Shown here in pieces: positions 34,481 to 61,630 of a stretch of 64,000 nucleotides of DNA; positions within the stretch are counted from its first letter, which is position 1, and each line of letters opens with the position of its first letter. The translations under genes were made by a program, and so were the position numbers. The DNA lies in the NCBI RefSeq assembly GCF_032062105.1, contig NW_026926947.1, positions 62,001-126,000 of the forward strand, read 5' to 3'. The DNA is from Saccostrea cucullata. Taxonomy: Eukaryota. The notes beneath the pieces are model-generated. The model saw nothing but the letters and a program-made list of their open reading frames with translations, did no database searches and was not told where the DNA came from.

Positions 34481-37400
34481 ATGGCAACAGCAGTTAATGA
34501 TGTCAAAGATTCCGACGAATTCAGAGGAAATGTTTCTTTGTGGAGTAATGATGGCGATGTTAAAGGTACCAAGAAGAGGTATTTTTTAAGACGTACATTT
34601 CTGTCTTAACGATTAAATATTTCAAATCAAACATATAAATCTGTGTGAATATCTAATAAAAAAAAACTTTTATTTCAGTGGGAAAGTTGGAAAAACAAAG
34701 GTAGGATTTTCATGTGTTTATTTCTATTTGAGAGTATTTGAATTGTTACATTGTACTTGTGTTGTCAGTCATGCAATGTTAAGAAGGACGACCCTCAATG
34801 TAGGTAGAAACAGAGTAAACTATATATAGGAATTTTCTCTCAATAAACTTAACTTTTTTCCAAACTAAAATCGTAGACGTATGAATGTTTTACCCTGGTC
34901 TTGCAAAATATATCCCTTTGTTTTAAAACCACACCCACATTTTAACTGATTCTTTTAGGGAGATCAAAAAGTAATGTGCACAATATGTTCAGAGATTGGA
35001 GATGAGGCAGAGGCAATTATGGTGTGCAAGGAACCCGATTGCAACGAAAAGTTATGCATTGCATGTACTAAAAGACATCAAAAGCAAAGGGCAACAAAAG
35101 GACATGACGTAATCAAGTTAGAAGATGACGTTTCTGATGACGTTAGCGTCCTCTGTGAGCTCTGCGAAGATGAAGGTGTTCCTGGTTTTGGATATTGTAC
35201 AGATTGCGATGACCCGGAAGTTCTTTGCAACAAATGCTGCAAGCGTCACACAGCATCCAGAAAATTCCAAAATCACAGAATATCACAAGATCTAAAACTT
35301 CTTATAAGGACGTAAGACTGATTTATTGAAACGTTTTAGAAATGCTATGATAATATGAAAGCATCAATAAGCATGATTAAAAGAAGTGTTTTTAAAAACC
35401 TGAAAAAAGTCATTTTGTCTTTGTAGGCGTAAACAAATTCTAACTCTTTCACCGCAAGCAGCTGTAAATAACACTTGTAATCCAGCGAGATCCCACGTAG
35501 GAAATGGCATCCAGGCTAGAGCAGCAGTGCCAGAAATTTCATCTGGCTTTCAATGTGAACCTTGTCAGTTTGAAAATATGACGGTTTCTGCAACTCAGTT
35601 TTGTCTTGATTGTGCAGAACCAGAGCCAATGTGTACACCTTGTGCGCAACAACACCTGAGACAAAAAATTGGTCGAGGTCATAAGCTGTCAAAAGGTATG
35701 CTACAATTTCGGACCCGACAAGGAGCGATGTCTTCAAGACAAGAAATTAGGTATGTTGTGATGAAACAAATAGCAAACTAACTTTACTATCCATATCATC
35801 GACAATATTATCAAAATTAAATTATTTTTTTTTATCTGAAAAGCGGAACTGTTTTATCCAAAAGACAAGCTGAAAAACAGGATGACGTAAGTTAATATCT
35901 ACATTATAAATTGCGTTAAAAAGGTTATATAAAATCGGTGATTTTGATGTACTGATTCTTAATTTCATTTGAAAGTTGAGAGTACGCAACTGTCTTATCT
36001 CTTGTGAATGTTAAACATCAAAATTTTAAGTTTCTTTCCCGTTTTATACCGGTAACACAATCACAAAATGTTTTTGTACATTTGTATACAAAACGCACAG
36101 AAACAACTTCACATACAGATGATCTAAAACCTTTACTAATAACAATAATGTCTTGTTTTTTCAAATATTTTTAAGATGCCTGGTAAACCAATGCCCGATG
36201 CTGTAAAATCAGATTCTGTCAAACTGCACTGGCGGAGATGCGATGGAGTGGACAGCTATCAAATACGATATAAAAGTAAATCTGGAAAGGAAAACTGGAA
36301 AATAATCCAAACTGACGATAATAAAAATGAAATTACCCTAGAAGGTCTAATGGCTGATACAACATACATTTTCCAAGTCCGAGGAGTGAAAGGGGACATT
36401 GAAGGTTCATACAGCCAGGCTAATGACGAAATAAGAACACAGGCATCTCTAGCCTCTTATTTTCTGTCTTACTCAGTTCAGCTTAGCAAAGGGAATCCTT
36501 CCAAGTTTGAACTGCCATTTACTGAAAATTCTAGAGCAAGAAATCAGCACTACAAGATACGTCAAATATGCTTAGGTACTAGTAAACCACAAAATATTTT
36601 TTGTCTCAATAATTCTCGAATTTAATTTTTATAAATTTGCGTGTCATTAGAGAGTGTTAAACTTTCTTAAATATTTTTAATGAAGGTGACATGACAAACA
36701 GAGGAAATCGTGAAGTTGAGAAAACCATTATGTTAGTAGGATCCACTGGGTCAGGCAAGAGCACACTGGTGGATGGAATCGTTAACTATGTGATGGGTGT
36801 GAGCTTCGAAGATCCTTTCCGATTTACTCTTGTGAAACTAGAGGACGAAGAGCGACGCAAAACCGGAAATCAAGTAATTTTTTTTTATATTTAACAAAAA
36901 TATTAGGCTATATGATCAAAGTCCATTCAAGTTATATTTGCCACTAAAGATTAAAGATAAACTTTAATTTCTATTCAAAACCACTCTAATTTTATAGGCA
37001 GTTTCTCAGACAGAATGGATAACTGTTTATAAAATCTTTCCTCAAAGAGGAGGAAGACTGGACTATACCCTCAATATCATAGATACCCCTGGCTTTGGAG
37101 ACACTAGGGGACCAGAGAGAGACAACGCCATTGTTGACCAAGTCCGATATCTTTTCTCTGCAAAGGGAGAAGAAGGGGTCCTTTTCCTGGATTCTGTTTG
37201 TTTCATTGTGAAGGCACCCGATGCTCGCCTTACTCCTGTTCAGAAATACATATTCCATGCAATCATGTCCCTATTTGGAAAAGACATAGAATCAAACATT
37301 TGTACGTTGATAACTTTTGCTGATGGAGCAGACCCGCCTGTTTTGGCTTGTCTTAAAGAAGCCAATCTTCCTTTTGGAAATACATTTCAATTCAACAATT

Positions 37401-38410
37401 CAGCACTGTTTGCCCCAAACAAAAATCTTCAAAGCAGCTCTTTGTCCCCGTTTTTCTGGGAAATGGGCTGCAAAAGCTTCGAAGCTTTTTTCAGACATAT
37501 GAGGAGATTCGAGACAAGAAGCTTGTCACAGACACAAGATGTCTTGCATGAAAGAGAACAGTTGAAAACAATCATTTGCAGCATCAGACCCCAGATAACA
37601 GCAGGCTTATCAAAATTAAGCGAGTTAAGGGAACAGCTGGATCTATTCAACCGGCACAAAAATGATATTGAAAGCAATAAAGATTTTACCTATGAAGTGG
37701 AGGAGACTAGACAGATCCAGAAAGATTTGCCTAGAGGTCAGGCTGTTACCAACTGCCTACAGTGTAACGTGACCTGTCATGAAGACTGTCATATTAGAGA
37801 TGATGACCAGAAGAGGAAATGTTCTTCAATGACGGATGGCTATTGCAGAGTCTGCTTTGATCATTGCTACTGGGATCAACACAAAAACACCCCATACATA
37901 TTTTCATACGTAACCGAAACGGTTACTAAAACCTACCAAGAAATGAAAGATCGGTACGAGAAAGCAATCGGTGAAAAGCTAACGCATGAGAAGTATATAA
38001 AAGAATTGACGATGGACGTTGACGAGCTAATGGACAACATCATGGATATGATGAATGAGATGAATCGCTGTAAGACCAGACTGAGAGAGATCGCATTAAG
38101 GCCGGAGGCGCTTACTACAGTTGAGCACATAGATCTGATGATCCAAGCAGAAGAGTCGGAGAGACAGCCAGGGTATACAAAGAGGATCAATATGCTCCAA
38201 GAAATGAAGAGGATGGCATTGGTTGATAAGGATTTTCACGATTTGGATCAACATTTTCGCAGCACTCGTAGTGACATCACTAGTGCAGTTGGTAAAGAGT
38301 TTCGAGGAAGACGTAAAATCAAGACGCGTCGTCAGGTGAAGGGAAGAAATGAAGGCGTTGTAGCTCGAGGAATTAATATGGTGAAAAAGTGGTTTGGAGA
38401 AGTAGCCTGA
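34481..38410 (+). CDS. Tandem B-box zinc finger (x3) - fibronectin type III - septin/AIG1-like P-loop GTPase - coiled-coil protein, 946 aa
   Basis: join(34481-34578,34679-34700,34959-35311,35427-35750,35844-35886,36176-36575,36686-36873,36998-38410); all introns GT-AG and phase-consistent, 2841 nt. B-boxes Cx2C..Cx2-4C..Cx2C..H..H. FN3 PGKP..VKLHW..YQIRY..LEGL..T.YIFQVRG. G1 GSTGSGKS, G2 SQT, G3 DTPG, G4-like TFAD. Confidence 0.9.
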
Positions 38411-38799
38411 AGGTATCAGCCAATGCTGCTTACATCAATATAATCTGCATTTTATTCAATATACATGTATTATACTTTAGTTGCATATTATAAGAATTGC
38501 TATTAAATTTGTTGTGGTGTTATTTACATTAAAAAGTGAAGCGAAGTGATTCTCGTTGCAATGAAAATAATAAAGGTTCTAAAAGTATTGCTTTTAGACA
38601 CCCGAATTTTGTAATGGGAGGAAAGAGTTCTATAATGTTTCCTCTTTCACCATGATTATTGTCAAACTATTTTCATTTGTAAAGCAACACTCAAAAGGCT
38701 GGTTCATTCGGCGAACAAAAAAAAAAAACAAGGAAGTTTAGATGAAAAAAAAAGAAAACCAGAAGTTAAGCCGCAAGAGCTCTGGAACCTGCAATGTAT

Positions 38800-39153
38800 T
38801 GTAATGGTTTAGGCCGTGGACATCGGCCTGGATAGCTCAGTTAGTAGAAAACCTGACAGGAGATGCAGGGATCCCGGGTTCGATTCCCGGTCCAGCCATA
38901 CATTTTCATCTTTCCTGTAACAGATTTGGTGCCGTTGACCACCCCTGGAATTGCAGGTGAAAGTCCTGCCAGGGGCTAACAAGAACTTGGGTTATGTCTC
39001 CGAGGGCGGAGACCATTAAGGAGGGAGGAATGTAATGGTTTGGGCCGTGGATATCGACCTGGATAGCTCAGTTAAAAGAGCACCTGACTGGAGGTGCAGG
39101 GGTCCCGGGTTCGATTCCCGGTCCAGCCATACATTTTCTCCTTTCCTGTTACA
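38800..39153 (+). mobile_element. TRIM (miniature non-autonomous LTR retrotransposon) with tRNA-like sequence inside each LTR (Helenus-like)
   Basis: 123-bp LTRs TGTAA..T(T/A)ACA at 38800-38922 and 39031-39153; TSD GTAT; PBS TGGTGCCGT(T)GAC (38927, tRNA-His-like); PPT AAGGAGGGAGGAA (39018-39030). Each LTR has A box TAGCTCAGTT, B box GGTTCGATTCC and a T-arm. Confidence 0.92.
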
Positions 39154-39421
39154 GTATAATCTTCGAACCGTATATTAATATTTACATTTGCTGATGTCTT
39201 TCCTTATATAACAATGCTAATAAAATTGAAATTCAATTTTTAATGACATGCAGTTGGTCACATAATCAGACTTTCTTTAATATGAAAAACAAACTGCAGG
39301 AGCCATTTGGAAAGTTCCGATTGTGATGTCACATGACGTCGTAGATACGTTATGTTGCATTTCCAAAATAAAGTCTAACTAATGTTTCTTTGTCATACGA
39401 CTAAAACGTCAAATATGAATA

Positions 39422-39592
39422 TAAGAAATAAAATATCATTTTTAGAGTTTCATTGGGTACATGTATGAAATAAAGTCGGTATGTAATTAAATCTACTATA
39501 ACTCCCTTAATTCGGGCGTTATAGAATTTGATCACGTGACCGACTTCATGTCATACCCCAATGAAACTCTTAGAATAGTATTTTATTTCGTA
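39422..39592. mobile_element. Palindromic MITE-like element
   Basis: TAAGAAATAAAATA..TAGAGTTTCATTGGG / CCCAATGAAACTCT..TATTTTATTTCGTA. Confidence 0.7.
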
Positions 39593-39881
39593 AATAAATG
39601 GCCATATTAGTGAATAATTTAATTTTGTTTTTATTCTAGCCTCTCGTTGGTTAATATCCAAAAGGAACGCAAATTATTTCTGTATAACTATAAACTGGTT
39701 TGGTATGGGAACACGCTCCATTGACAACCGGATGAATCATCTTTACGCAATTCTCGCATTTCTTTCATTTCAAGTCCTCGGAATTCATGGAAAATTCTGT
39801 ACTATGGTTGTGTTATTGAACGGCAAATTTGAACTTATAAAGAGAAAAGCAATTTTACATCAATTGTTTTAAAATTAAATT

Positions 39882-41240: not shown

Positions 41241-41948
41241 GCAGTATATCCTTATTACATAACTTCATGTCGGTAACTAATACAAATATAAACGTGGTTT
41301 GAACCTAACGTAGATATTAAATCTACTTTTTTTCATTTATTTGATGATCATCATCTGACTCCCCCCCCCTTTTTTTTTACTTTCGTTTGTCTTATGACGT
41401 GTATTCTATTCACACCTGTTTGTTGTTGTGTTGGCAGCAGTTTGTTGGGATAAAATGTGTTTACACTCAAAGAAATAAGATTTTCGAAAATTCTTGGGGT
41501 TCCAGTTTTCAACTAATACAAACAATCATCATTGTTCAACTTCTCTAAATTCGTAAACATGTAAGTATATACATGTAGTTATTATCTATTTACATTTCTA
41601 ATAATTTTCCCTCTTTGATTCTTTACAAATTCAAAAACATCTAATTTTCGCATGAAATTCCGAAACTGAGCATGAATATCTACAGACTTACGTCATAATA
41701 ATGTACTTGACGTCAAAATGTAGTGCCAATGTGTAGGAACTCGTAAGAAAATTAATGTAAACGTAAGAAAGGAATTCTAAAGCATCTTAAAACCGCCATC
41801 ATCAACAATTATATCAAGCCATCGTCTACATGCTTGCACGCTCGTGTTAACTTGATTTTGAATCTGTTACTTTCTATTGTGTGATATCCTTTACATTTTA
41901 TAACTCAAGTATTCTATATCTCACCTGCATATCAAACTCATTAATAGT

Positions 41949-42579
41949 TATGGCACGCCAAATTCACAAAAATGAGATAAACATAGTTTCACAGTCGATA
42001 AACTAGGTTTATTTTGTAAACTATACTTTACGGACTGTAAACTATAGTTAACAATGTTAATCTATATTTTACATCCGTAAACCATAGTTAACGCGATAAT
42101 CTATGTTTCACAACCGTAAACTATACTTAACACTGAAAACAATCATTTGCGATTGCAAAACATAGATTATCTGATAAATACAGTTTCACGATTTGTAAAC
42201 TATAGTTTACAAACCATTAACTGTAGTTAACGATCTGATAAATATAGTTTCACGATTTGTGAAACTATGATTAACAACTCTTAACTAAAGTTTACGATTG
42301 TAAACTATAGTATACAAACGTGAATCTATGTTTATCAACAAAATCTATTGTTAACGCTTATTACAGACAGATAAACTTAGATTACCATTCGTAAACTATA
42401 GTTAACAACCGTTAAATATAGTTTTACAGATGAAAACTATACTTAACGAATCGTTAACTATACTTAACGAATCATTAACTATAGTTTACGGTTTGTAAAC
42501 TATAGTTTACAGTCGATAAACCTAGTTTTTCGACTGTGAAACTAGGTTTATCTCATTTTTGTGAATTTGGCGTACCATA
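41949..42579. mobile_element. MITE with TATGG..CCATA TIRs and an internal ~22-bp minisatellite
   Basis: ~65-bp TIR TATGGCACGCCAAATTCACAAAAATGAGATAAAC.TAGTTTCACAGTCGA; interior of TAAACTATAGTTTAC palindromic units. Confidence 0.8.
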
Positions 42580-42738
42580 ATAATGGTTGTTGTGTACACA
42601 ATTTTCAAAATTATGAAAATATGATTATTTTATAAATCAAGTAATAAATATGTCTTTCGTTACTCAAGAAATGAATTTAATTTTGAAAATTCACGAGGTT
42701 TATGAAATATGACGCTTCACGCTAACACGCTTCATTAA

Positions 42739-43685
42739 GGTAGGACAAAACACCCGTGGATTCTATTTTAACCCATTTCTTTAAAAGTACTGGAGAAAAG
42801 AAGAATAATATTACTATAGTGACAACAATGAACGATCCCTGTAAGAAAAATAATAAGTTTTGGCATGTTTGCATCATATTTTGTGAAAAAATCAGAGTAT
42901 CCTATATATTGGTCACCTGGGGGCTTACATTTTGGAGTGTTTTTATGCTAAGTGTAATAAACAAGCATGTGACAGTCTGTTATAAAATGCAGTGTAACTT
43001 TTGTTTCATACATAGTAGAGGAATGATATTTAGAAACATATATAAGGAGTCTCCATTCGCTATGTACTACTAAGGTCAAGGTCATATCAAGAGGTCAAAG
43101 GTCAAATATTGTGACGTCATCTACTGAATCTTTTAGTTTTTTTGCCATTGAAATTTTTTTGATCGCAAAAATATCTGATACCACCGGTTCATTTCTCTTT
43201 ATTTGTACACATTTTATTCTAGGACTCATTTGAATCATTCTGTTGATTTTTTTTTAAAAATGGAATCATATATTTTCTCTTAAAAAAACTTAAACTGTCG
43301 GATATTTACATGTGAATTTTCAATTCCGACACTACGTATGTTCTATTTTTACTTTACATTTTACTCAAATTTTCAAGTATCAAGTTGACATACTAAGTTA
43401 ACGTAAAGCAACAAAAAGGATATCTTTATGAAAAGTATTCCAAAAATTTGCAGTAGATCAATTGATAATTCTAAAATAAAGCTCATTCTCAAGTCTAATG
43501 TCTGATTTCACAATCTTCTTACCTGGATCTGATAGGCCATATTTCAAACTATGTAGGCAAAAAAAGTGCGGGTGAATTTCTTTCATATCATTTATAAAGA
43601 GAGATTTTGTATCCTAGAACAAAATATCAAAATTTCAGGAAAAATGAATTTGAGGAAAAATTTGCCTTATCTATTATGTCCTACC
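42739..43685. mobile_element. Non-autonomous DNA transposon with TTAA TSD (Kolobok-like)
   Basis: TTAA|GGTAGGACA ... TGTCCTACC|TTAA. Confidence 0.7.
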
Positions 43686-44127
43686 TTAAATGTTCTAAAA
43701 TAAATTTCTTAAGTAATTGAATAAAGAAAGATCTATTAATTATTTTTTTTAAAATAAAAAGATATTATTTATATATGTCCCATTTAAAAACTTTCGTGGT
43801 AATTAAACCTGTTCTAGAACATAGATGAGAACAAGTCATTATCTCTGGATTTTTTTCTATTTATTGACATTTGCCATACAAAGAAGAACGTCTGAAAAGT
43901 TTTGCACTTCATTGTACAAGATGAATAATTTAGATTGCATATTTTATATGTACATGTATTTCGGGTAACACTGATACTTTAAGAAAGGTTTACAAACCAT
44001 AGAAAACGACTTTTTGAATTATATATATTTTATTTATTTATTTATTTATTTTTTGTTTTTGTTTTTGGAACAATGATACTTAGACCAGTAATTTTCCCCC
44101 CAAAATCATGTATTTTTTTCAGCAGTT

Positions 44128-47100
44128 ATGGATAAAGGAGCCAGTGGCGTAAAGGATTCAGACGAGCACTTGAGCTTTTCCAATCTCTCGCTAGATGAAG
44201 TATGTGCATTTTTTAAAAAAAAATCAAGATCATATAATTTGTTCAGTTAGGATCTTTTAAAAAGCAATGTTTATAAAAGTTTTTGATCTGAATGCATTTT
44301 AAAAAATCATGTGAGCCCATCTTTATATTTGTTAATGGATTGCGATTGTAAGTAATAACTAAGTTCATTTTATGCATTAATTGCCCTGTCATACCCAAAT
44401 CAATGAAACATAAGAGTTAAGGTTAGGGTTAGATAACGAACAGTATTCAAGATCAAAAGTCCATAAAATAATACAAAATAAGAGCACAGCAAACATTAAA
44501 AACATCAGAGGTAGGATCAGGTGCCATGACATCCCCTGCCGACCTGTCACACACGCCATGTGCCACAGCAAGTGTTTTCTTCTTTACACGCACAAGATTT
44601 TGTACCAGTTCTTTGTTATATGAATACAAAAATAAGTCTGCTAATAACGGGGCGAAATTGGTACCCACGGAAATTCCAATAGATTGTTGGAAGGCCTGGT
44701 CTCCGAACACAACATAGATATTGTCAATCAGAAATTCAAGCATTTTTATAAGTCGACCTTAGAGTATACAATCAGAATGTTTTTAACAAAAAACAAATTA
44801 CATCTTTACTTACCTCTTAATTTTAATTTCAAACATGTATATAGAATAGAGACTAATTTAAATGTTTTTATTTCCTTTAACAAAGTTTCCTTTGAGAGTC
44901 CAGTATTCGAAAACCGGCAATGTGAAAATGCAATGTTCTTACATTTTGCCCCAAAAAAAAAAATTGATTTGAGAGCCTTCAGAAAAGACTAGCCATTTAA
45001 GAGCTCACCAATGATTCAAATAAACATGTTTTATTATTTTCAGAAATGAGTTCTATTATTATTTACCTTCGAATTTAGGAGGTTGATAAGAGGTTGAGCT
45101 ACATACAAAATACTGAAAAATAGCTTTTAAAAAAATTATTGCACAATTCCTGACGTCATAAATGCATTGGCTATAGGGAAATTTTCCTCATTTGTAATTT
45201 TAAGGGAGCCGACAGGGATTTTATTAAGTGTAAACTACAATAGAGAAACTCTTTATCATTATACCATATATATTTATATAGACTTTCGTGTACATGCCAA
45301 GTTTTCGGAAAATGTACCGTCCTGGTATTTTAAATGCCCGTTACAAAATACAGGTATATTTACTATAGAATTACAGTTGTACACTGTTTATAGGAAAGCG
45401 CATATTTTCGCACTTTATAGCAAATTATACAAAAACTATTATTATACTTCTGTTAAAATGTTTCCTATATAAAGTTCAGAAGGTAAAAATAGCTATCTTT
45501 TATAGTTCACGCATAGCAAAGCTATACCCCGGGGTATAGTTTTTGCTATCCACCCTCGGAAAATTTTCATGCAATTTTTGCCTCCAATTTTGATTTCCAA
45601 CGATAGATCTATCTACTGATGATGTCATAATGACTTCAGTAGCATTGTGACGTCATCAGGATTTCAGATTATTCTTGCAGTATTATCTTACTGCAAAAAA
45701 ATTCAAACCTCAGAAATTATATTATACATCAGTACAATAAAACGCTCATCCACTGTTTGTGAGTGGGATAACTCTTTTATCAAACCTTTGACAGAAACTA
45801 TTCCCCTCGGGCAAGCCCTCGGGGAATAGTTCTCTGTCGCGGGTTTGATAAAAGAGCTATCCCACTCACACCCAGTGGATAAATGTATACTATTGACTTT
45901 ATGCTTAAATTATGATAACTGATGCGTAATACTATATTGTACGATGTTAATCTACCTATCAGTTGAAAAAACGTTTTAAAAATCAGTTATATATATTGGT
46001 AATTAATTTTTTGAAACTGTTCTTTCTTTCTTAATTAAACGAACAATGCTTCAAAAAAATAAATATGCTTCATTTTACTATGATGCGAAATATTGCGCAA
46101 TGGAAACCCCAGTAGGACTACTTAAAATAGATTTCCAGTCACTAAGCCTTCGGAATCAAGTGATAATTGAGGCATTGTCAATTAAGATATTAACAGGAGC
46201 AAAAAAGCTCAAAGAGAACCCTGTATCTTCATACGTGTATTTATGTTACAATGATCAAAACTAATTGATGTTTTAATTCTACTTTCCTTTACTCCAAATA
46301 GAGAAGACAAGATGCTTTGTGCACAATATGTTTCGAAGTGGGGGAAAATGAAAAGGCTGTTATGGTTTGCAAAGAACCCAACTGCGGAGAAAAATTATGT
46401 GAAGGGTGCAGTAAAAGACATCAGAAACAAAAAGTCACAAAGGATCATAGCATCATTAAACTTGTGGAAGATGTGTCGGTTGATGAAGTTTTCTTCTGCG
46501 AGCTTTGCACAGATGAAGCCATCCCTGGCTTTGGATACTGCATTGAATGTATAGATCCAGAAATACTTTGTTATAAATGTTGCAAACGACATACTGAATC
46601 TAGGAGATTTCATTACCACCATATATCCCAGGACCCCCAATTGCTACAAAAGATGTAAGATAACATTACAGCTAAACATGAATAAAAAAAAAAGCTATTT
46701 TTCTCTTAAGGGCAATCAGGTGTAATAAATGCAAGTGGTATACCAATCACTATAACGGAGAGGTGCTTGGCGTTTGCCTACTTGCCTGTTTAACCAGTTG
46801 TGTTCAGCTTCATTAATTGCAAATTAAATTTATTAAATAAATAAATGGTTTTATATTTTAGACACAAATAAATAAGCTAGGAACACTAATACGATAACAG
46901 ATAATGCCATTAATTTTTACTTTGTTAATCTTTAAAGGCGTTTAGACGAGTGCTTCAAAACTGAAAAAGATTTAATGGAAAATCTACAATTGAAGTCTTG
47001 CAAGGAAAATGTTACCCAAGAGAAGATTGACATAGCATCTGATCAACCCTGTGAACCTTGCCAGTTTGAAGGTACACACGTGCCCGCTACTCAGTTTTGT

Positions 47101-47256
47101 CTTGATTGTCAAGATCCAGAGCCATTTTGTTATCCGTGTGGACAACAACATGTACGACAAAAGGCTGGAAGAGGTCATAGACTGTCACAGAGCATGCAAT
47201 TTTTTAAGTCGAAGCAAGAAGCAATGCCGGCCACACTTAATCAAACGCATGATTAA
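44128..47256 (+). CDS. Paralogue 2, 5' half: 3x B-box protein, 247 aa if translated to TAA 47256
   Basis: join(44128-44199,46302-46654,46938-47256). Exon 1 MDKGASGVKDSDE matches MATAVNDVKDSDE of copy 1. The 353-nt exon has the same size and phase as copy 1 exon 3 (70/113 aa identical by manual count). Confidence 0.7.
44400..44790 (-). mobile_element. Penelope-like retroelement RT fragment, internally deleted
   Basis: MLEFLIDNIYVVFGDQAFQQSIGISVGTNFAPLLADLFLYSY, a typical PLE RT motif, joined directly to the terminal motif. Confidence 0.75.
45748..45880. mobile_element. Palindromic MITE-like element
   Basis: ATCCACTG..TGTGAGTGGGATA.CTCTTTTATCAAACC / GGTTTGATAAAAGAG.TATCCCACTCACA..CAGTGGAT. 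Confidence 0.75.
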
Positions 47257-49088
47257 CAAGTTGTACAATATTGAATGAAGATACTGTTATATGCGTGGGG
47301 GTTGGACTTTAGAATATTGCATATTAATCACCGTGAGGCTGATGGTGGAGTGTCTTTAAGTGATGTAAAGTAGCATCCAGTTGTAAATTATTAGAAATGT
47401 TTTATTGTTCACGTTATTTTTATCGTTTACTTGAATTATTGATGCATTATACACATTGCACTTCAACATTTATGTAAACAAATTTTTTGTACAAAGTTTT
47501 TGTACTACTAGACAATCTAGTGAAATATTGTTGAATAGATAGTAAGGGACAGCGATACTAAGATGTTATACGTCAGTTTTTCATCATTATCTACCATATT
47601 ACGACTGTAATTTACTTAATCACATGAGTTGTAAAGTGGGCGCCTGCCATCTTTCTTACGAAGAAAATAGTCAAGTGGCATAAACATTGTCGTTTTACAA
47701 TTGATAAGATCAAAATAACACTGTCCATGTCATCAAATGCTTGTTATTGGTACTTACATGTTATTTTATTGCAGTATTGTCATTTAATTATGTTTTATTT
47801 TAAGAAATGTTTTGGAACTTGATTGTGTAGCGTAATACTTATGTGTGTGTATTATTGTTCGGTATTACTACGCCGTGGATTGTGTGTGTCCGTTTTATTA
47901 CAGATTGTTTGTTGAACTAATTTTATTATGTATATCAAATAGAACTTCTAGCTCCCACCTCACATGTAGAAAGGACATTTTCAGCGACATTGTTTTCTAT
48001 ATACGAGCAGCGAACGTCAGTTTCATCATAACGATCATAACGATCATCAGACCATGATACGTCATCAACATCACTGACTGTATGTAAGCTGTGAATTACT
48101 AGCGACTTAGGCATGAGAAAAAAATGTAAACTTTAATACAAATTAACGAGACCCGATCTACTTGATCTGCGCATACGTTTTAACGCAGCGTCGACTCAGG
48201 CACGTCACAGTACCCTGGACTGCCGTCACAATTGAATACAATAACGTCACAATTAAAATGACGTCAAATTGCGCTAAAATGTTTCGCTGATCTTGTTCTA
48301 TAGACTGCTTGTTGAAATCTGGCTCATTCTGGCATTTTTATTACTTACATGCCATTAGAAAATATATTTTTAAATTAATAAACAACTTTGAAACATAATT
48401 TATTTTGAGGTAACAATTTCTTGGTATGGATACATTAGTTTTACTTTGTTTTATTTCAATTTGTGAGTTAGAAAAAAAATCTCACTGCAACCAAAAGTAA
48501 ACGATCTTAGTCTTTCTCCTCAAACATGTTGAAGTGTTTATACTCACCATTTTTTATTGAGCATAAAGAAAAAATTATGTCATAATGTAAGAATGATTTA
48601 ATTTTTAGAAACTAATACGTTTTTTGATGTTTGTAAACCTATTGCAACTTATAAAATATCTAGATGGATAAAATAAGTCCTATTTTTGTGTTTTGATATG
48701 CCCCCTTTCCACTGCAATAAAGGCTACCTCCGATTTTCTTTTCATTTTTTAAAAGAGGGATGCAAATTGCATGATATATGTGAAAATCAAAACATTTCAT
48801 CATATATTTCTTTTTTAATTTGTCAATTTCTTTGTTTATTGTGGAGATTTAGTATATAATTGTGTATAAAAACACGAAAAATGGTCCATATCTTGAAAGT
48901 GCCCCCATTTGACTACAATAAAGGCAAGGTAACAAAATTTCATTTTAATTTTTCTTAGCATAATACATACAAATTTATTTCCAAGAATCAAAATTTTTTA
49001 TCATTCCGTTCTCGTAATTTCCAACTAGATTGGGCTATCATTCCGTTTTCGTAATTTCCAACTAGATTGGGCCTCGTTAAGTAAGGTA

Positions 49089-49365
49089 TAGTTTCTCCAC
49101 CGCACGGACACCGCAATCCACTGTATTTTATTAGGTCAGAGATGTTAAATTTATTATAGCTTAATATACCTACGAAATGGGCGTTATCTACACTACAGCT
49201 AGGACTTATACTCATTGGCATTTGACAGGGTGCTAAGGAAGCTTACAATTTTTGGTGTCAGAAGTGGGATGTCCTGTAATCTACGAGGACATATAGGATA
49301 CGAACCTGAATACCTGTCAAATACTGAAGTAGAGTGGATTGCGGACTGTCGAGTGGTGGAGAATA
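49089..49365. mobile_element. Small TIR element
   Basis: TTCTCCACCGC.CG.ACA.CCGCAATCCACT / AGTGGATTGCGG..TGTCG.GTGGTGGAGAA. Confidence 0.6.
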
Positions 49366-49659
49366 GAAAATCTATTTGTAAATAGCGATGTATATGTTCC
49401 TGTTACTGTTTTAATAGTTAAAAATGGAGGTTGCTACTTCGCCGGATCCTTAAGTATTTCTAATTGAACATAGGAGAAATGTTCAGTTAGGCCAAGGGGA
49501 CGAAACAGATGTCTGTGGGAGGAACACTGATGACGAATATTTAATGGAAAATGAAAACCTTTTGGGCAGACATGGCAGTGACGATGACGACGAAATAATA
49601 CGTAGTTTCCGTCGGCGATCTGATTATCAGTTAGCTGACGACGCAATAGTGATCACACT

Positions 49660-50887
49660 TGCAGTTTGATCTGCCATTCACTGAAAATTTAAGGGCAAGA
49701 AATCAGCACTACAAGATACGTCAAATATGCTTGGGTAAACCACAGAACGTTTTTGTTAATAATTTTCGTATTTTGATCTACTGGCGTGTTCCTAGACAAT
49801 GTTTAATTTTATTGATTGTCAATGAATGTGACATTACAAATAGAGGAAATCGTGAAGTGGAGAAAAATACCATGTTAGTAGGATCTACCGGATCAGGTAA
49901 GACCACACTGGTGGATGGAATCGTATGTCATGTGATGGGTGTAAGCTTCGAAGATCCTTTCCGATTTACTCTTGTGAAACTCGAGGATGAAGAAGCACCT
50001 CTGTCCCCTTTTTTCTGGGAAATGGGCTGCAAAAGTTTCGAGGCATTCTACAGACATATGAGGAGATTCGAAACAAGAATCTTGTCACAAACACAAGATG
50101 TCTTGCATGAAAGAGAACAGTTGAAAACAATCATCTGCAGCATCGGATCCAAAAAAAGCGGGAACATTTGGATCTATTCAATCGGCACAAAAATGATACT
50201 GAAAGTAATAAGGATTTCACGTATGAAGAGGAGGAGACTAGACTGATCAAAAAAAAATTTGCCTAGCAGCCAGGCTGTTACCAACTGCCTACAGTGTAAC
50301 GTGACCTATCATGAAGACTGTCATATCAGAGATGATGATCAGAAGAGGAAATGCTCTTCAATGAAAGATGGCTATTGCAGAGTCTGCTTTGATCATTGTT
50401 ATTGGGATCAACACAAAAACACCCCATACATATTTTCATACGTAACCGAAACGGTTACTAAAACCTACCAAGAAATGAAAGATCGGTACGAGAAAGCAAT
50501 CGGTGAAAAGCTAACGCATGAGAAGTATATAAAAGAATTAACGATGGACGTTGACGAGCTAATGGACAACATCATGGATATGATGAATGAGATGAATCGC
50601 TGCAAGACCAGACTGAGAGAGATCGCATTACGACCTGAGGCACTCACTACAGTTGAGCACATAGATCTGATGATCCAAGCTGAAGAGTCGGAGAGACACC
50701 CGGGTTATACAATTAAAGATTTTGATCAACATTTTCGCAGCAGTCGGAGTGATATTACTAGCGCAGTCGGCGCAAGTTTCGAGGAAGGCGTAAAATTAAG
50801 ACGTGTCGTCCGGTAAAGGGAAGAAATGAAGGCGTTGTAGCTCACGGAATTAATATGGTGTAAAAGTGGATTGGAGAAGTAGCCTGA
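49660..50887 (+). pseudogene. Paralogue 2, 3' half: GTPase/coiled-coil pseudogene
   Basis: Near-identical to 36503-38410 but lacks FN3. A deletion at ~49995 removes G2-G4 (..EDEE|APLSPFFW). Frameshifts near 50150-50260, a ~50-bp deletion at ~50712, and a late frameshift/stop. Confidence 0.88.
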
Positions 50888-51119
50888 AGTTATCAGCCAG
50901 TGTTGCTTAGATTAAAATAATCTGACTTTTTTCAACATCTTAAATCTTAGTTGCTTCTTATAAGATGCATCGAACAAGAACTACTACATATATTGTTGAA
51001 GTGTTACTGTTAGTGTAGTGTTATTTGCAATTAAATGAAGTGTTATATCTTCCCTTTTAAATTGACATGATTTTAATTGCAATGAAAATACCCTGAAACA
51101 TATGGAGATATCGAACAGT

Positions 51120-52347: not shown

Positions 52348-52480
52348 NNNNNNNNNNNNNNNNNNNNNNNNNNNNNNNNNNNNNNNNNNNNNNNNNNNNN
52401 NNNNNNNNNNNNNNNNNNNNNNNNNNNNNNNNNNNNNNNNNNNNNNNNNNNNNNNNNNNNNNNNNNNNNNNNNNNNNNNN
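52348..52480. other. Assembly gap (133 N)
   Basis: Run of N. Confidence 0.99.
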
Positions 52481-52817: not shown

Positions 52818-52819
52818 AT

Positions 52820-56900: not shown

Positions 56901-58763
56901 AGTATTTTTTTTTTTATTAAAAGAAAAATAAGTAACGTCAGGTGCCTGTGTACCAAGGGTAAAGGTTAATAAAGTTGAGTAAATCCTTGCCAATTCGTAC
57001 TATAAAAAAGTAAAACCTTGTCAAGAATCCATTGATTCGAGGAAGCGATTTTGACCTATATGTATAATTCAAATTTCTTATTCATAAGAAATAAGTCGAC
57101 TTTTAAAAAACGATTTCGGGTGACTTCTCATTTTCGCTTTGATTACCTGGAAGCACATACAATAATAACATGGTAGTGCACAGTTCAGTGTGTATACATA
57201 ACAATGTGAAAAACCTATAAATATAGAAACTTGATTAGGCCTAAAAGATACGCTTTTTTGGAAACTGTATTAAGTATATAAAAAAAGTTGTTGGTTTTAT
57301 TACGGTAAAAAAATAAATTCTATTCGGCATAAAATGCTTTTTAAAATCAAGTTGGACACTGAAATATTTTTATATACAATAATTTCTACTCTAAATACAG
57401 GGCAATAAATACTGTATAATTATTAAATGATGGAATAATATCCCCATCTCTGATTGGCTGAGATCCAACAATGTTTGAAAAATACTACGTTATATTGACC
57501 TACACGTGCTCTTCCGGGTCAATACCATATAATGTCATATTGTATCATTTTTTTTATTTCCTGGGTTGTTAAGTAAATGCAAAATTACAAAAAGACCATT
57601 AACATACGGTAGTCAGATAACATATTCACAAAATACAGGATGTAATTCACAGAAGGAATATACATAAATAAAATATTTTCATATACGAGAGCTGTACTTT
57701 AAGATAACATCGCTTTTGTACAATATTTCCTACAAAACATTTTTAAAAATCCCCAGTTTACAGATGTGAATCTCTAAGTACTTCTGCTTTTTGGGGGAAT
57801 TTCACTTTATTACTGTTCACACACATTTTCAGTTGATAATGATTGTAATAGTTTATACATGCTAAGTATATACCAAGATACACCCTGTACAAGTTTATGA
57901 TACAGTTGACATTTTGAAATAAAATGGTACTCATATTCAAACTCCATTTGACAACAAAAGTTAAATGTATTCTCCCTAGAAATATGAGTAAATCTTCCCT
58001 TCTCAATCATTTCAATCACAAATGTGTGCTTAATCTACAGAATTCTATCAACCGTTAAAAAACTCAAAATTTTTCCATACATGATTACAAGAGTGACTCG
58101 TTCTAATAACGCCAGTACCCCTGACTCTGTGGCTAAAAATTATAAAATTGTTGATCATGCATCCTTTACTTATCATTCAATCAGATAAGCAACTACTGAA
58201 TAAAATTAATGATAACACGGATTCTTTATTTACATAATACCATTGTGCAGCTCAAAATTAGTATGTACTTATCATTACCAAGCTCTTCGTTTCTATGGTA
58301 TTTACTGTGGTGTGGTAAAAAAGAGTTTTTAAAGCATTCGAGCATTTTCTCCAATTACACAACAAAGACTTCCTTCTCATTAAAATTATGTTTTTGGTTT
58401 GTCTGCTAAATATCCAAAAGCAGAGAAAAATAGTTATATATTTGAAGAATTTATTCATATACACTATATGAACAATAGAACTCCGCTTGAACACCAGAAC
58501 TCTTGATCCTGGGACCATAAATTTCACAATTCTGGTATAGGGCCCATGTTTCTTACAATGATGCCAAAAGCTCGTCTGTTTAATGAACAGGAGTAAAAAA
58601 AGAAAGAGACTATGGAATTCACATTTTTATTTGCCTGCAATTTGTAAAATCTACATGTAATATCTAATATTTGCTTTAACTGGTTCAGGAGTTGAGAAGA
58701 GACTGAAAATGTTCAAAGTCCTCACGGACGACGCAAGTCGAAGGACGACAGACAAAAATAGAG

Positions 58764-58794
<31 letters not shown>

Positions 58795-58994
58795 TTGTCG
58801 TAAACCATGCAAAAAGAACTGAAGAGAATTCACGTTTTTAAAAAAAATCTCTTTTTGAACATTTTTTTCATCCCAAAAGTTGTTTATAATACTTTTGTTG
58901 GATATGTGTACGCCTCGCTTTAAAAAATTATAATTATGTATTTAGGTCAAAGGAAGACAATTGTGAGTTTTTTAGAAAAATAGACAATTCCAGC

Positions 58995-59141
58995 ATGTCT
59001 GATGATCGTTGTGAAGATACTGTGAGTTTTTCTTTTAATAATCAAACATTGATATCTTTGTGTATTGGTCAAAATTAACATCGATTTGGTATAATTCATT
59101 TAAGAAATTCATGTGTATTTGTTAGATAATGATATAAAGTT

Positions 59142-59176
<35 letters not shown>

Positions 59177-59668
59177 AAGCACTGTGGCTTGGAAAAAATA
59201 GAAATTGGTTTATTATTGAAAAGTTTAAATCCAAAAGTAGTCCCATGACCAATCATGGCTTTGCTATTCTTGAGAAGAAGATTTTTAAAGAATTTTCCTA
59301 TATATTTCTATGTAAAACTTTGGTTGGCCAGTTTGGCCCCGCCCTACCCCCGGGGGTCATGATTTGAACAAACTTGAATCTACACTATCTGAGGATGCTT
59401 CCATATAAATATGATCAATTATGGCTTTGTTATTCTTGAGAAGAAGATTTTTAAAGAATTTTCCTATATATTTCTATGTAAAACTTCGGTCGGCCATTGT
59501 GACCCCGCCCTACCCCCGGGGGTCATGATTTGAACAAACTTGAATCTAAACTACCTGAGGATGTTTCCCCATAAGTTTCATCTTTCCTGGCACAGTGGTT
59601 CTTGAGAAGAAGATTTTTAAAACATACCACCTAATTTTCATTAATTCCCAATTATCTCCCCTTGAATG

Positions 59669-59718
<50 letters not shown>

Positions 59719-59727
59719 ACTTCGTGG

Positions 59728-59758
<31 letters not shown>

Positions 59759-59770
59759 AGAGAAGAAGTC

Positions 59771-59813
<43 letters not shown>

Positions 59814-59830
59814 GGACGCCGGACAAAATG

Positions 59831-59873
<43 letters not shown>

Positions 59874-61584
59874 CAAGTCTTCAAGATATATAATTTATAT
59901 GTGCATGCAGTTAAAATGGCCTATATCTAATTCCTATACCTGTGCCGTATTTAAATGAAATAATTATTTGTTATTCTTCCTCTGGTATCATACTACTTAT
60001 GAAGTCAAAAACAGATATTCTTGAGGAAAATGAAAATAAAAAAGAAAATGTTCCCCGGGAGACTCTGGAAAAATGGGAAACTCTGAAAACCGAATTGGTG
60101 GAAATTGAAGATGAAAACAATGGAAATCAAATGGTTGGTATAGGACAAGTTCAAATCCCAGATTTACTCGATAAGAAGGTAATCAAAGTTCCAAACTATT
60201 CCTGTCGTACTCTTAATGTTTACCCAATTAAGTTTATAAGGAAAAAGAAAATCAGGAAATATTACGTTGTTAGTTTGTTCCTCAGTTGGTCATCGACGTT
60301 GAACATTCGTCGTAAAAAGTGGGGTAAAAACTTAGCAGACTTTAAAAAACTGAACAAAGTACTTTAAACCTTATGAATGTTACCGTTTTGAATAAGTTTT
60401 TATTTGTTTAATTCTGTTCTAAATTCAATGGCGACTGGTTTCAAATGATAGATTTGATAATAATGATTTTTGTTCATTTAGAATAAATTGATTCTCAAAG
60501 GAAACAGCGATGTCTGCACTGAACACAACTCTGAAGTTCAGAACGTTTGCATTACTTGTAAAGAAAAGCTGTGTTCTGTTTGCTCTAAATCTCATGGGTT
60601 AGAAGCCGGGAAAGATGTCCATCAGATATTACCCTTGCTACAATTTCTAGGCGATAAGTTTCCTTGCGCCAAATGCAAAATAAGTGCTTCTTATCACTGT
60701 CATTCCTGCAACTTTGATTTTTGCAACGAATGTAGAATCCGTCATCAATCCGACGTACTGATTGACCATGCATGGCTGGATATCACAACGCATGCCTTAA
60801 TCCTTGAAAGTAAATCAAGGCCCCTTTGTGGTGTCTGCAGTGGGTCCGATATAATTGAGGCACATTCCTTCTGCCAAACCTGTAAACCTTTGCTTCCTCT
60901 CTGCGAAAGATGTTCCAAAAAACACGAGAAAGCTTTTTCAACGCACAGTCTTTGCCCTGGTTTGCCACCAAAAAATGAAGAAACCGAGAGTCAAGTGGAC
61001 GATGATAAATTCTCTGTCAAATGCATTCCCTGTAAATATGAGAATGAAAGTAACAATGCCACTTCATTCTGTCAAACCTGCAATGAACCTGAACCGATGT
61101 GCTCAACATGTGCAACGCAGCATACTCGAGAGAGAAAAACACGTAATCACAAACTTTGTAGCGATCTTGAAAAGCTTCTTCGAAGTAAACGAATAGAGAA
61201 CGATCCACTATGTGAAAATTGTGCATTTAATGACATTACGTCCACAGCTATTGGATTTTGTCTTAATTGTGATGAGCCAGAGCCTTTGTGCAAAAACTGT
61301 ATAACTATGCATTTAAAACAAAAAATTTTCCGGAATCATCAAATTTGTTACGAGTTAGAAAAAATCAAAACTGATTTAGTTAAAGGGGCAAAGGTGTTGT
61401 ACTGCGAGCCTTGTTCTTTTGAGAAAGAGAACCACATTGCTACACATTTTTGTCTTGATTGTGATGAACCCGAACCACTATGCCAGGAATGTGCTACACA
61501 TCATCTCAAACAACGAAATGGCAGAGGACACAAGCTTTGTGACGATATTGAAAAAATTTCCCAGTCAACTATTTTGAGTGATAG
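58995..61584 (+). CDS. Paralogue 3 (partial, continues beyond window): six tandem B-box zinc fingers
   Basis: join(58995-59021,60005-60178,60482-61584...). The 1.1-kb exon has six B-boxes, the last closely matching B-box 3 of copy 1 (CEPC.FE...AT.FCLDC.EPEP.C..CA..HL.Q..GRGH). It ends at AG|GTAAG in phase 2, as copy 1 exon 4 does. The first two exons are less certain. Confidence 0.8.
59145..59873 (-). mobile_element. Cg170-like HINE, same family as 8774-10286, intronic
   Basis: Near-identical termini, ~3 satellite units, (GACA/GACG)n microsatellite. Confidence 0.88.
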
Positions 61585-61630
61585 GTAAGATCGATCACAA
61601 ATAGTTCTATGCAGATTACATCGTTTTCGT

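What the first reader, a model, noticed from the sequence alone, without database searches (positions are those of the whole stretch)
34481..61584. Tandem family of poly-B-box / FN3 / septin-AIG1-like GTPases: candidate uncharacterised innate-immune sensor-effector system
Seen: three same-strand paralogues at ~10-15-kb spacing. The intact one fuses TRIM-like B-boxes (no RING) to FN3, a TRAFAC-type GTPase and a long coiled coil. B-box number varies (3, 3, 6) and one copy is decaying. Established: B-boxes drive higher-order assembly in TRIM proteins, and GIMAP/AIG1, septin, IRG and GBP GTPases oligomerise on membranes or pathogens and evolve by birth-and-death. Inference: a variable B-box array nucleates a polymerising GTPase effector. 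I know of no functional description of this architecture but cannot search.
Basis: partly seen in the sequence, partly recalled or inferred. Interest (0 to 1): 0.8.

Follow-up and report, generated by a model that had tools for sequence, protein, structure and literature searches.

The report
Oyster B-box/FN3 GIMAP-like GTPase gene cluster
Three neighbouring oyster genes (two intact, one decayed) encode an expressed but never-studied GTPase related to the GIMAP/septin group, whose core is conserved from corals to fish and to which bivalves have added a variable array of B-box zinc fingers; an immune role is plausible but not shown.

Summary
The window (Saccostrea cucullata, contig C9084) carries three same-strand paralogues.

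- **Copy 1 (34481-38410):** eight GT-AG exons, 2841 nt, 946 aa. Spliced RNA contigs from four runs join the B-box, FN3, P-loop and GTPase exons.
- **Copy 2 (46308-50965):** a mosaic pseudogene. The FN3 exon is replaced by nested repeats, the G2-G4 region is deleted, and there are frameshifts and stops.
- **Copy 3:** starts at about 58995-60005 with 6 B-boxes in the window. It continues about 20 kb beyond the window (7th B-box, FN3, GTPase) as RefSeq model LOC134273000.
- **Gap (52348-52480):** intergenic, touching no exon.

The G domain is a divergent AIG1/GIMAP-Toc-like paraseptin GTPase. The supposed coiled coil is a helical bundle with an inserted beta-hairpin and a conserved 8-10-ligand Cys/His cluster. 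It has no match among solved structures.

The GTPase+tail core is not bivalve-specific: it is 43% identical to zebrafish si:ch73-170d6.2 and occurs in fish, amphibians, reptiles and corals. I found no name or paper for any member. Bivalves add RING-less B-box arrays (1-7). Constraint is very strong on the GTPase and tail and weaker on the B-boxes.

An immune sensor-effector role and polymerisation remain untested inference. Another note of this scan (s1-711107) covers the same stretch; I found nothing on other DNA.

The parts
34481..38410 (+). Copy 1, an intact gene of 946 aa. Coding exons: 34481-34578, 34679-34700, 34959-35311, 35427-35750, 35844-35886, 36176-36575, 36686-36873, 36998-38410. 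The 3' UTR runs to about 38510.
   Evidence: Spliced RNA contigs give the joints. GT-AG dinucleotides and the exon sum of 2841 nt are. The 22-nt micro-exon was located.
34959..35750 (+). Copy 1 B-box array. B-boxes 1 and 2 lie in exon 34959-35311 and B-box 3 in exon 35427-35750. There is no RING.
   Evidence: Pfam ANCHR-like_BBOX at E 4e-8 and 7e-4; Cys/His pattern.
36176..36575 (+). Copy 1 FN3 domain exon plus the linker to the G domain.
   Evidence: Pfam fn3 at E 6e-10.
36686..37750 (+). Copy 1 G domain. G1 (P-loop GSTGSGKS) is in exon 36686-36873. G2 (SQTE), G3 (DTPGFGDT), G4 (TFAD) and the FNNSA motif are in the first part of exon 36998-38410.
   Evidence: Translations; conserved columns; fold nearest Toc33, GIMAP7 and GIMAP4; septins are the best sequence-profile hits.
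37750..38410 (+). Copy 1 tail. It is a helical bundle with an inserted beta-hairpin and a conserved Cys/His cluster, followed by a polybasic stretch and a C-terminal amphipathic helix.
   Evidence: AF2 pLDDT 86.7; conserved C/H columns; no match among solved structures; C-termini.
46308..50965 (+). Copy 2, a mosaic pseudogene. Open B-box exons lie at 46317-46655 and 47029-47232. Nested dispersed repeats at 47260-49660 stand where the FN3 exon should be. A linker and P-loop remnant at 49663-49993 is fused to the tail at 49993-50884. A 580-nt deletion removes G2-G4. There are two frameshifts, two stops, an invariant Cys changed to Tyr, and an 18-aa deletion.
   Evidence: tblastn and blastn against copy 1; lesions; repeats; dS gradient.
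58995..61612 (+). Copy 3, 5' part only. Exons lie at about 58995-59021, 60005-60178 and 60482-61612 (6 B-boxes). The gene continues outside the window: 7th B-box at C9084:135765-135998, FN3 at 137241-137657, P-loop at 138344-138544, and GTPase with tail at 143862-145253.
   Evidence: RefSeq model P0124 (LOC134273000, 1173 aa) mapped by tblastn; B-box count. I obtained no RNA evidence for this copy.
52348..52480 (.). Assembly gap, intergenic between copy 2 and copy 3.
   Evidence: No exon or family homology lies near it. It was not filled.
62557..63963 (-). Reverse-transcriptase/RNase H ORF of a gypsy-like retroelement inside the roughly 12-kb intron of copy 3. It continues into L001:42-3017.
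   Evidence: Pfam RVT_1 and RT_RNaseH; ORFs in L001.

Best explanation
This is a tandem cluster of two intact genes and one chimeric pseudogene. They belong to a bivalve-expanded branch of an old, unstudied metazoan GTPase family.

Shown:
- Each intact protein is cytosolic, with no signal peptide or transmembrane segment.
- It reads, from the N terminus: a RING-less array of ANCHR-like B-boxes (3 in copy 1, 7 in copy 3), one FN3 domain, a divergent AIG1/GIMAP-Toc-like (paraseptin) G domain, and a roughly 280-aa tail.
- The tail is a helical bundle carrying a beta-hairpin and an 8-10-ligand Cys/His (probably two-zinc) cluster. It ends in a polybasic stretch and an amphipathic helix.
- The gene is transcribed and spliced as one unit.
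- The GTPase+tail is under very strong purifying selection and is 43% identical to a zebrafish protein. The B-box array is the variable part.

Inferred:
- By analogy with GIMAP, Toc and septin GTPases, GTP binding drives G-domain dimerisation and release or rearrangement of the tail.
- The polybasic stretch and amphipathic C-terminus then hold the assembly on a membrane.
- The B-box array and FN3 act as a lineage-variable protein-interaction or higher-order-assembly module that decides where or with what the switch assembles.
- A stress, immune or cell-death role is the likeliest biological context (about 40%), but it is not demonstrated.
For: Gene model and splicing:
-. X2 record 7 (1727 nt) runs from the B-box exons through the FN3 and P-loop exons into the GTPase exon. 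Records in X3 and X5, which are RNA-Seq libraries by record, show the same joints.

Domains:
-.

G-domain motifs and conservation:
-, set against the AIG1 motif definitions in PMC7053062.

Fold:
- AF2 model with pLDDT 83.6 and pTM 0.82.
- Foldseek gives GIMAP7, Toc34 and GIMAP2 at E about 1e-6.
- VIA gives Toc33 Z 14.6, GIMAP7 13.5, GIMAP4 13.3 and septins 11.6.
- The sequence profile against PDB chains gives septin Cdc10 at 2e-6 and Toc34 at 1e-4.

Tail:
-.

No TM segment; polybasic and amphipathic C-terminus:
-.

Family size and arrays in this genome:
-.

Breadth:
- Across bivalves.
- In vertebrates and corals.

Constraint gradient:
- dN/dS is 0.02 (G domain and tail), 0.11 (FN3), 0.13 (B-box 1-2) and 0.36 (B-box 3).
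- Against the Ostrea orthologue, identity is 90% (G domain), 83% (tail), 83% (FN3) and 65-72% (B-boxes).
Against: - No experiment or expression contrast shows induction by infection or stress.
- No direct evidence shows GTP binding, hydrolysis, dimerisation, zinc binding or membrane binding.
- The homodimer prediction gave no verdict.
- The protein scores below Pfam's AIG1 cut-off (24.7 against 27). It passes the Septin cut-off only on the first 75 of 280 profile positions, so family placement rests mostly on motifs and predicted fold.
- The RNA contigs are 93-95% identical to the window. They come from other alleles or individuals, not from this exact haplotype.
- Copy-number counts are inflated by uncollapsed haplotigs.
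Confidence: 0.55

Rival explanations
1. Housekeeping reading. The conserved GTPase+tail is a constitutive cytoskeletal or membrane-trafficking factor, septin-like in role. The bivalve paralogues with different B-box arrays are sub-functionalised tissue or compartment variants with no part in defence.
For: - Purifying selection on the G domain and tail is very strong (dN/dS 0.02).
- Oyster and zebrafish share 43% identity over 471 aa.
- Copy 1 has a retained orthologue of almost the same length in Ostrea edulis.
- Transcripts turned up in all four runs I laid, from three studies.
- The best sequence-profile hits among solved chains are septins.
Against: - Large lineage-specific expansions occur in bivalves and in cyprinid fish, with tandem arrays, pseudogenes and chimeras.
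- N-terminal modules are swapped (B-box arrays of 1-7, protein kinase, extra FN3).
- Haplotypes at this locus are very divergent.
- All of these are more usual for defence or stress families than for core machinery.
Confidence: 0.3
2. TRIM-like ubiquitin-ligase reading. The B-box array makes the protein a TRIM-type E3 ligase or adaptor, and the GTPase is only a regulatory appendage.
For: B-boxes are the best-scoring N-terminal domains. One relative is auto-named 'TIF1A-like'. B-box together with FN3 also occurs in the TRIM C-I subfamily (own knowledge).
Against: No RING or other E3 catalytic domain appears in any exon or in full-length relatives. No coiled coil follows the B-boxes. The most conserved part is the GTPase+tail, which exists without B-boxes in most animals.
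Confidence: 0.07
3. Artefact reading. The B-box exons and the GTPase exons belong to separate genes and the 946-aa model is a false fusion.
For: None found. The idea arises only because the exons are separated by introns and the family is repetitive.
Against: Single RNA contigs cross every intron from the B-box exons into the GTPase exon at GT-AG sites and in frame, in four runs from three studies. The same architecture is annotated in ten bivalve genera.
Confidence: 0.03

Closest known systems
GIMAP/AIG1 GTPases (human GIMAP2, GIMAP4, GIMAP7; mollusc AIG families, PMC7053062)
   Same: - They are the nearest predicted fold together with Toc33/34 (Z 13.3-13.5; Foldseek E about 1e-6).
- G1, G2 (SxTx), G3 (DxPG), a T-x-x-D G4 and an FNN-S-A motif matching the IAN core FNN(K/R)A are all present.
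- Both have a helical C-terminal extension.
- Both show tandem arrays and lineage expansions.
- Lu et al. describe AIG1 fused to kinase or death domains in snails; kinase-fused relatives also exist here.
   Different: - The protein scores below Pfam's AIG1 cut-off (24.7 against 27).
- The conserved box is only partly recognisable.
- The tail is far larger and carries a Cys/His cluster.
- N-terminal B-box arrays and FN3 are not described for GIMAPs in the papers I could search.
Toc33/Toc34 chloroplast import GTPases
   Same: They give the best structural match to the G domain (Toc33 2j3e Z 14.6 with 197 residues aligned; Toc34 Foldseek E 2.6e-6). They are paraseptin GTPases that dimerise across the nucleotide site (own knowledge).
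   Different: They are plant membrane-anchored receptors. There is no shared tail, B-box or FN3, and sequence identity is about 16%.
Septins
   Same: They are the best sequence-profile hits among solved chains (Cdc10 E 2e-6). The G3 motif DTPGFGD is identical. Pfam Septin scores 28.5 against a cut-off of 26.2.
   Different: Only profile positions 2-75 of 280 match. G4 is TFAD, not AKAD. No septin-unique element is matched. The structural Z (11.6) is lower than for Toc and GIMAP.
Zebrafish si:ch73-170d6.2 and its vertebrate and coral relatives (uncharacterised)
   Same: It is a true homologue of the GTPase+tail: 43% identity over 471 aa, E 9e-138, with the Cys/His cluster conserved. ESM Atlas models superpose at TM 0.81. 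FN3-fused forms exist in turtles, frogs and fish.
   Different: My Pfam scans of four non-bivalve relatives found no B-box. No function is known and no paper in the searchable library names it.
TRIM proteins, C-I subfamily (MID1, TRIM9 and others)
   Same: B-box zinc fingers and an FN3 domain occur in one cytosolic protein. B-boxes mediate higher-order assembly (own knowledge).
   Different: There is no RING, no coiled coil after the B-boxes and no SPRY. The B-boxes are of the ANCHR-like type and come in arrays of 3-7.

Membership tests
AIG1/GIMAP (PF04548) | G1 P-loop GxxxxGK(S/T) | tested here: met
   GSTGSGKS in exon 36686-36873. G33, G36, G38 and K39 are invariant in 77 relatives.
AIG1/GIMAP (PF04548) | G2 SxTx and G3 DxPG | tested here: met
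   SQTE and DTPGFGDT. Motif definitions come from PMC7053062.
AIG1/GIMAP (PF04548) | Conserved box between G3 and G4 (..LLVxQLGRF/YTxE..) | tested here: inconclusive
   The family consensus is CFxxKAPDARLTxxQ. It has a hydrophobic strand followed by R-L-T (R154 invariant), but the LLVxQLG part is not recognisable.
AIG1/GIMAP (PF04548) | G4 of T-x-x-D / NKxD type | tested here: met
   TFAD, with T183, F184 and D186 invariant.
AIG1/GIMAP (PF04548) | G5/IAN motif RxxxFNN(K/R)A | tested here: inconclusive
   FxFNNSA is present, with N210 invariant and N211 and S212 at 90% or more. The leading Arg is not conserved.
AIG1/GIMAP (PF04548) | Score at or above Pfam's gathering cut-off (27 bits) | tested here: not met
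   P0132 (other haplotype of copy 1) scores 24.7, P0124 (copy 3) 23.3, and single exons 17-19 bits. Relatives pass: zebrafish 39, coral 46.8, Dreissena 35.4.
AIG1/GIMAP (PF04548) | AIG1/Toc-type G-domain fold | tested here: met
   Predicted model only: Toc33 Z 14.6, GIMAP7 13.5, GIMAP4 13.3. Foldseek's top hits are GIMAP7, Toc34 and GIMAP2.
Septins (PF00735) | Full septin G domain with the septin-unique element and an AKAD-type G4 | tested here: not met
   The Pfam match covers only profile positions 2-75 of 280 (28.5 bits). G4 is TFAD. Septin structures rank below Toc and GIMAP (Z 11.6).
TRIM (tripartite motif) | N-terminal RING | tested here: not met
   No RING-type family appears in any exon or full-length relative at E up to 0.1.
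TRIM (tripartite motif) | B-box followed directly by a coiled coil | tested here: not met
   B-boxes are present. They are followed by short linkers, FN3 and the G domain.
DUF8206 (PF26633) | Match to the Pfam model | not testable with these tools
   The model is not in the local Pfam copy. The only evidence is a lead: ESM Atlas feature hits of 0.95-0.97 to clusters in which 24-58% of members carry it.
si:ch73-170d6.2-like metazoan GTPase+tail family (unnamed) | Collinear homology of the G domain and the Cys/His-bearing tail | tested here: met
   43% identity over 471 aa at E 9e-138, with the C/H ligands aligned. Atlas TM 0.81-0.86 over about 500 residues.

The most novel reading that the evidence does not exclude
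The G domain plus zinc-bearing tail defines an unrecognised, ancient class of animal self-assembling defence GTPases. It would stand parallel to GIMAP, IRG and GBP, be present from corals to reptiles, and be expanded in bivalves and cyprinids. In bivalves the RING-less B-box arrays would serve as diversifying recognition or nucleation modules. The very divergent haplotypes at this locus (dS about 0.2 between apparent alleles) would be kept by balancing selection.
Probability: 0.2. Interest if true: 0.8.

Novelty: new variant of a known kind. Interest (0 to 1): 0.55.

Why it matters
If the inference holds, several things follow.

- Animals outside mammals would carry a further family of nucleotide-driven assembly GTPases that nobody has studied. 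Its tail domain has no solved structural relative.
- The oyster genes would then offer natural experiments: the same engine coupled to 1-7 B-boxes, to kinases or to extra FN3 domains.
- The zebrafish homologue makes the core genetically tractable.
- For bivalve biology, the family adds to the list of expanded, haplotype-variable candidate stress and immune genes.

Even if the role turns out to be housekeeping, a protein 43% identical between oyster and zebrafish with no known function is worth a first biochemical look.

Tried and rejected
- **Homodimer prediction.** I tested the G domain (residues 15-256 of A1, two copies, with GTP). The result was no verdict (score 0.02 against a mark of 0.32). 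It counts neither for nor against binding.
- **Tail against solved structures.** By sequence I found only coiled-coil noise, best E 0.014 for tektin. Foldseek's best E was about 1. VIA-align gave only generic spectrin-like three-helix bundles at Z up to 9.9, below the level that means anything for helical proteins.
- **Literature.** Eight searches found no paper on this architecture, on DUF8206 or on si:ch73-170d6.2. The eLife 2021 TRADD-N paper and the Biomphalaria AIG paper mention AIG GTPases and B-boxes in other architectures only.
- **C12476 as a separate paralogue.** I first read the C12476 copy that way, because repeat-dominated flank searches did not list it. Direct alignment showed collinearity with window 11272-44414, so I now read it as the alternative haplotype.
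- **5' UTR exon.** I looked for the upstream exon implied by loose ends of the RNA contigs. No match to their first 30 letters lies in the window at up to 3 mismatches.
- **PF26633.** It could not be searched; it is not in the local library.
- **Joined spliced model.** Exons were searched one by one by reference. For full-length work I used RefSeq proteins returned by the searches: P0132 (the other haplotype, 946 aa) and P0124.
- **Large representative search.** Not used. It carries no names or taxa and would not have changed the reading.

Full report
**Source and gap**

The window is G000:C9084:62001-126000. RefSeq protein P0124 (LOC134273000, Saccostrea cucullata) sits on a contig of 296,121 bp, the length of C9084. 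It matches the DNA here at 100% in its last exon. The genome is therefore the hooded oyster.

The only run of N is 52348-52480. It lies between the last copy-2 homology (50965) and the first copy-3 exon (58995). No family-related sequence is near it. It touches no reading frame and only makes the copy 2 to copy 3 distance an estimate. I did not fill it.

**Copy 1 (34481-38410, + strand)**

Stop-free stretches in the right order carry these features:
- two B-boxes, then a third;
- an FN3 domain;
- a P-loop;
- a 470-aa stretch with DTPGFGDT and TFAD, followed by a Cys-rich helical tail.

Logan contigs of four public runs from three studies were laid on 34400-38600. Two of the runs are RNA-Seq libraries by record. 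The contigs skip every intron at GT-AG sites. X2 record 7 (1727 nt) runs from the B-box exons through the micro-exon, FN3 and P-loop exons into the GTPase exon.

After placing a 22-nt micro-exon, the coding exons are:

| Exon | Coordinates |
|---|---|
| 1 | 34481-34578 |
| 2 | 34679-34700 |
| 3 | 34959-35311 |
| 4 | 35427-35750 |
| 5 | 35844-35886 |
| 6 | 36176-36575 |
| 7 | 36686-36873 |
| 8 | 36998-38410 |

They sum to 2841 nt, which is 946 codons plus TGA. The refutation test 'transcripts do not join B-box to GTPase exons' therefore fails.

One caveat applies. The contigs are 93-95% identical to the window. At 27 of 40 listed variant sites they carry the letter of contig C12476. They come from other alleles or individuals, and contigs cannot give expression levels.

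**Copy 2 (46308-50965)**

- The two B-box exons are still open, with all ligands intact.
- The FN3 exon is gone. In its place, 47260-49660 consists of two dispersed repeats, one nested in the other.
- A 580-nt deletion fuses the P-loop exon to codon 145 of the last exon, removing G2-G4.
- The tail has two frameshifts, two stops, an invariant Cys changed to Tyr, and an 18-aa deletion.

Synonymous divergence from copy 1 falls along the gene:

| Segment | Synonymous divergence |
|---|---|
| B-box 1-2 | saturated (pS 0.89) |
| B-box 3 | about 1.0 |
| P-loop exon | 0.49 |
| Tail | 0.25 |

Copy 2 is therefore a chimera, or its 3' half was converted by a copy-1-like gene. This agrees with the scan's other note on this stretch (s1-711107).

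**Copy 3**

The 366-aa open exon 60482-61612 holds six B-boxes. The RefSeq model adds exons at about 58995-59021 and 60005-60178. Beyond the window it adds:
- a seventh B-box (L001:9765-9998);
- FN3 (L005:1241-1657);
- the P-loop (L005:2344-2544);
- the GTPase with tail (L005:7862-9253, open).

The roughly 12-kb intron after the B-box exon holds a gypsy-like retroelement. I have no RNA evidence for this copy. No further member lies within 10 kb on either side of the cluster.

**Contig C12476**

This contig carries a 946-aa gene (P0132) that is 90.5% identical over the gene body. It is collinear, in reverse orientation, with window 11272-44414 at 80-95% identity. It lacks the retroelement at 21808-28139. 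I read it as the uncollapsed alternative haplotype; a large recent duplication is not excluded.

Between the two copies, dS is 0.16-0.31. dN/dS by region is as follows:

| Region | dN/dS |
|---|---|
| G domain | 0.02 |
| Tail | 0.02 |
| FN3 | 0.11 |
| B-box 1-2 | 0.13 |
| B-box 3 exon | 0.36 |

**What the protein is**

The B-boxes are of the ANCHR-like type, and no RING is found. There is one FN3 domain.

For the G domain:
- The haplotype protein scores 28.5 bits on Pfam Septin, but only on positions 2-75 of 280. It scores 24.7 on AIG1, below the cut-off of 27.
- A profile of 77 relatives finds septins first among solved chains (Cdc10, E 2e-6), then Toc34.
- An AlphaFold2 model of the G domain with tail (pLDDT 83.6, pTM 0.82) is closest to GIMAP7, Toc34 and GIMAP2 by Foldseek (E about 1e-6).
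- By VIA-align it is closest to Toc33 (Z 14.6), GIMAP7 (13.5) and GIMAP4 (13.3), ahead of septins (11.6).
- Measured against the AIG1 motif set quoted in PMC7053062, the family keeps G1, G2 (SQTE), G3, a T-x-x-D G4 and an FNNSA motif. The conserved box is only partly kept.

I therefore file it as a divergent branch of the septin/AIG1 (paraseptin) clade, nearest AIG1/Toc. It is not a septin and not a canonical GIMAP.

**The tail**

Folded alone, the tail scores pLDDT 86.7. It is a long helix, a long beta-hairpin enclosing small strands, then four helices. Ten Cys/His columns are invariant or nearly so: C83, C86, C90, H91, C94, C105, C113, C116, C120 and H125 of alignment A2. This is enough for two zinc sites, which is an inference.

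The tail has no relative among solved structures by sequence, Foldseek or VIA-align. ESM Atlas feature searches point to clusters carrying Pfam DUF8206, which I could not test.

No transmembrane segment is predicted; the highest 19-residue Kyte-Doolittle mean (KD19) is 1.36. Most family members end in a polybasic stretch followed by a short aromatic amphipathic helix.

**Family**

- In this assembly the last exon has 45 matches, about 25 of them open. Arrays occur on C14205, C2533, C9084 and others. The count is inflated by haplotigs.
- B-box, FN3 and GTPase proteins are annotated as 'uncharacterized' in Crassostrea, Saccostrea, Ostrea, Pinctada, Mytilus, Mya, Mercenaria, Ruditapes and Dreissena. 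Argopecten carries a multi-FN3 relative with no B-box on record.
- Variants exist with 1-7 B-boxes, and with protein-kinase or extra FN3 N-termini.
- Copy 1 has a 950-aa Ostrea edulis counterpart. Identity is 90% in the G domain, 83% in the tail and 65-72% in the B-boxes.
- The GTPase+tail is much older. Zebrafish si:ch73-170d6.2 is 43% identical over 471 aa (E 9e-138), with the Cys/His cluster conserved.
- Relatives fill teleosts, sturgeon, gar, rays, amphibians, turtles, a lizard and corals. Some carry two FN3 domains.
- Atlas models also point to nematodes and fungi. The 'AIG1-like' group of nematodes and a Rhizophagus fungus in PMC6872716 may be the same family. I did not test that.
- None of the 120 best hits was mammalian or avian. 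That does not show absence.

**How it probably works**

Shown: a single transcribed cytosolic protein with a variable zinc-finger array, an FN3 domain, a constrained GTPase and a constrained novel tail.

Inferred from what is established for GIMAP2/7, Toc34 and septins (own knowledge):
- GTP-dependent dimerisation occurs across the nucleotide site.
- This is coupled to movement of the C-terminal helices.
- The polybasic/amphipathic end attaches the protein to a membrane.
- The B-box array and FN3 supply self-association or target choice.

The defence or stress context rests only on circumstantial genomics: expansions, arrays, chimeras, module swapping and divergent haplotypes. The main rival is a housekeeping role, favoured by the deep conservation.

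**Novelty**

The genes are in RefSeq as uncharacterised models. I found no paper on the architecture, on DUF8206 or on the zebrafish gene. I rate it a new variant of a known kind (AIG1/paraseptin GTPases) with an unstudied tail domain.

- I built no joined spliced protein of the window copy.

Noticed in passing
window 21808-28139 (- strand): A gypsy-like LTR retroelement with a long open pol ORF (1787 aa: RT, RNase H, integrase) and an upstream 363-aa ORF with a zinc knuckle. It is absent from the collinear contig C12476, so it is probably an insertion polymorphism between haplotypes. Observed only.
   Followed up: partly
window 11272-44414 vs G000:C12476:3-16962: Two collinear versions of this locus differ by 5-20% in sequence. 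Introns of copy 1 are only 65-82% identical between them, apart from one at 98%. RNA contigs from other individuals are a third mosaic of the two. This is unusually deep haplotype divergence, or else a large recent duplication.
   Followed up: partly
window 11435-12493 (+ strand): A 352-aa open frame with ankyrin repeats (Pfam Ank_2, E 1e-29). It is 95% identical on C12476. The gene was not examined further.
   Followed up: no
window 41945-42580 and 42735-43690: Two high-copy dispersed repeats with at least 20-40 copies genome-wide at 88-97% identity. The first also matches itself on the opposite strand at about 74%, so it has internal inverted symmetry.
   Followed up: no
window 47260-49660: A dispersed repeat (about 47280-48000 plus 49210-49660) is interrupted by a second repeat of about 895 bp (48143-49035). 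Together they occupy the place of copy 2's lost FN3 exon.
   Followed up: partly
window 38800-38917 and 39034-39154: A direct repeat of about 120 bp just downstream of copy 1 is present in both haplotypes. It is the element another note of the scan (s1-710987) calls a small LTR-like unit. I did not examine it.
   Followed up: no
P0143, P0147 (Crassostrea virginica), P0227 (Montipora), P0128 (Hemibagrus): Relatives carry other N-terminal modules on the same GTPase+tail: a protein kinase with FN3 in the eastern oyster, and a second P-loop/GTPase-like region in a coral and a catfish.
   Followed up: no
window 34464-34478: RNA contigs carry 50-159 further letters upstream of 34478 that do not lie on 34400-34477. 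This implies an unlocated upstream 5' UTR exon for copy 1. Their first 30 letters have no match in the window at up to 3 mismatches.
   Followed up: partly
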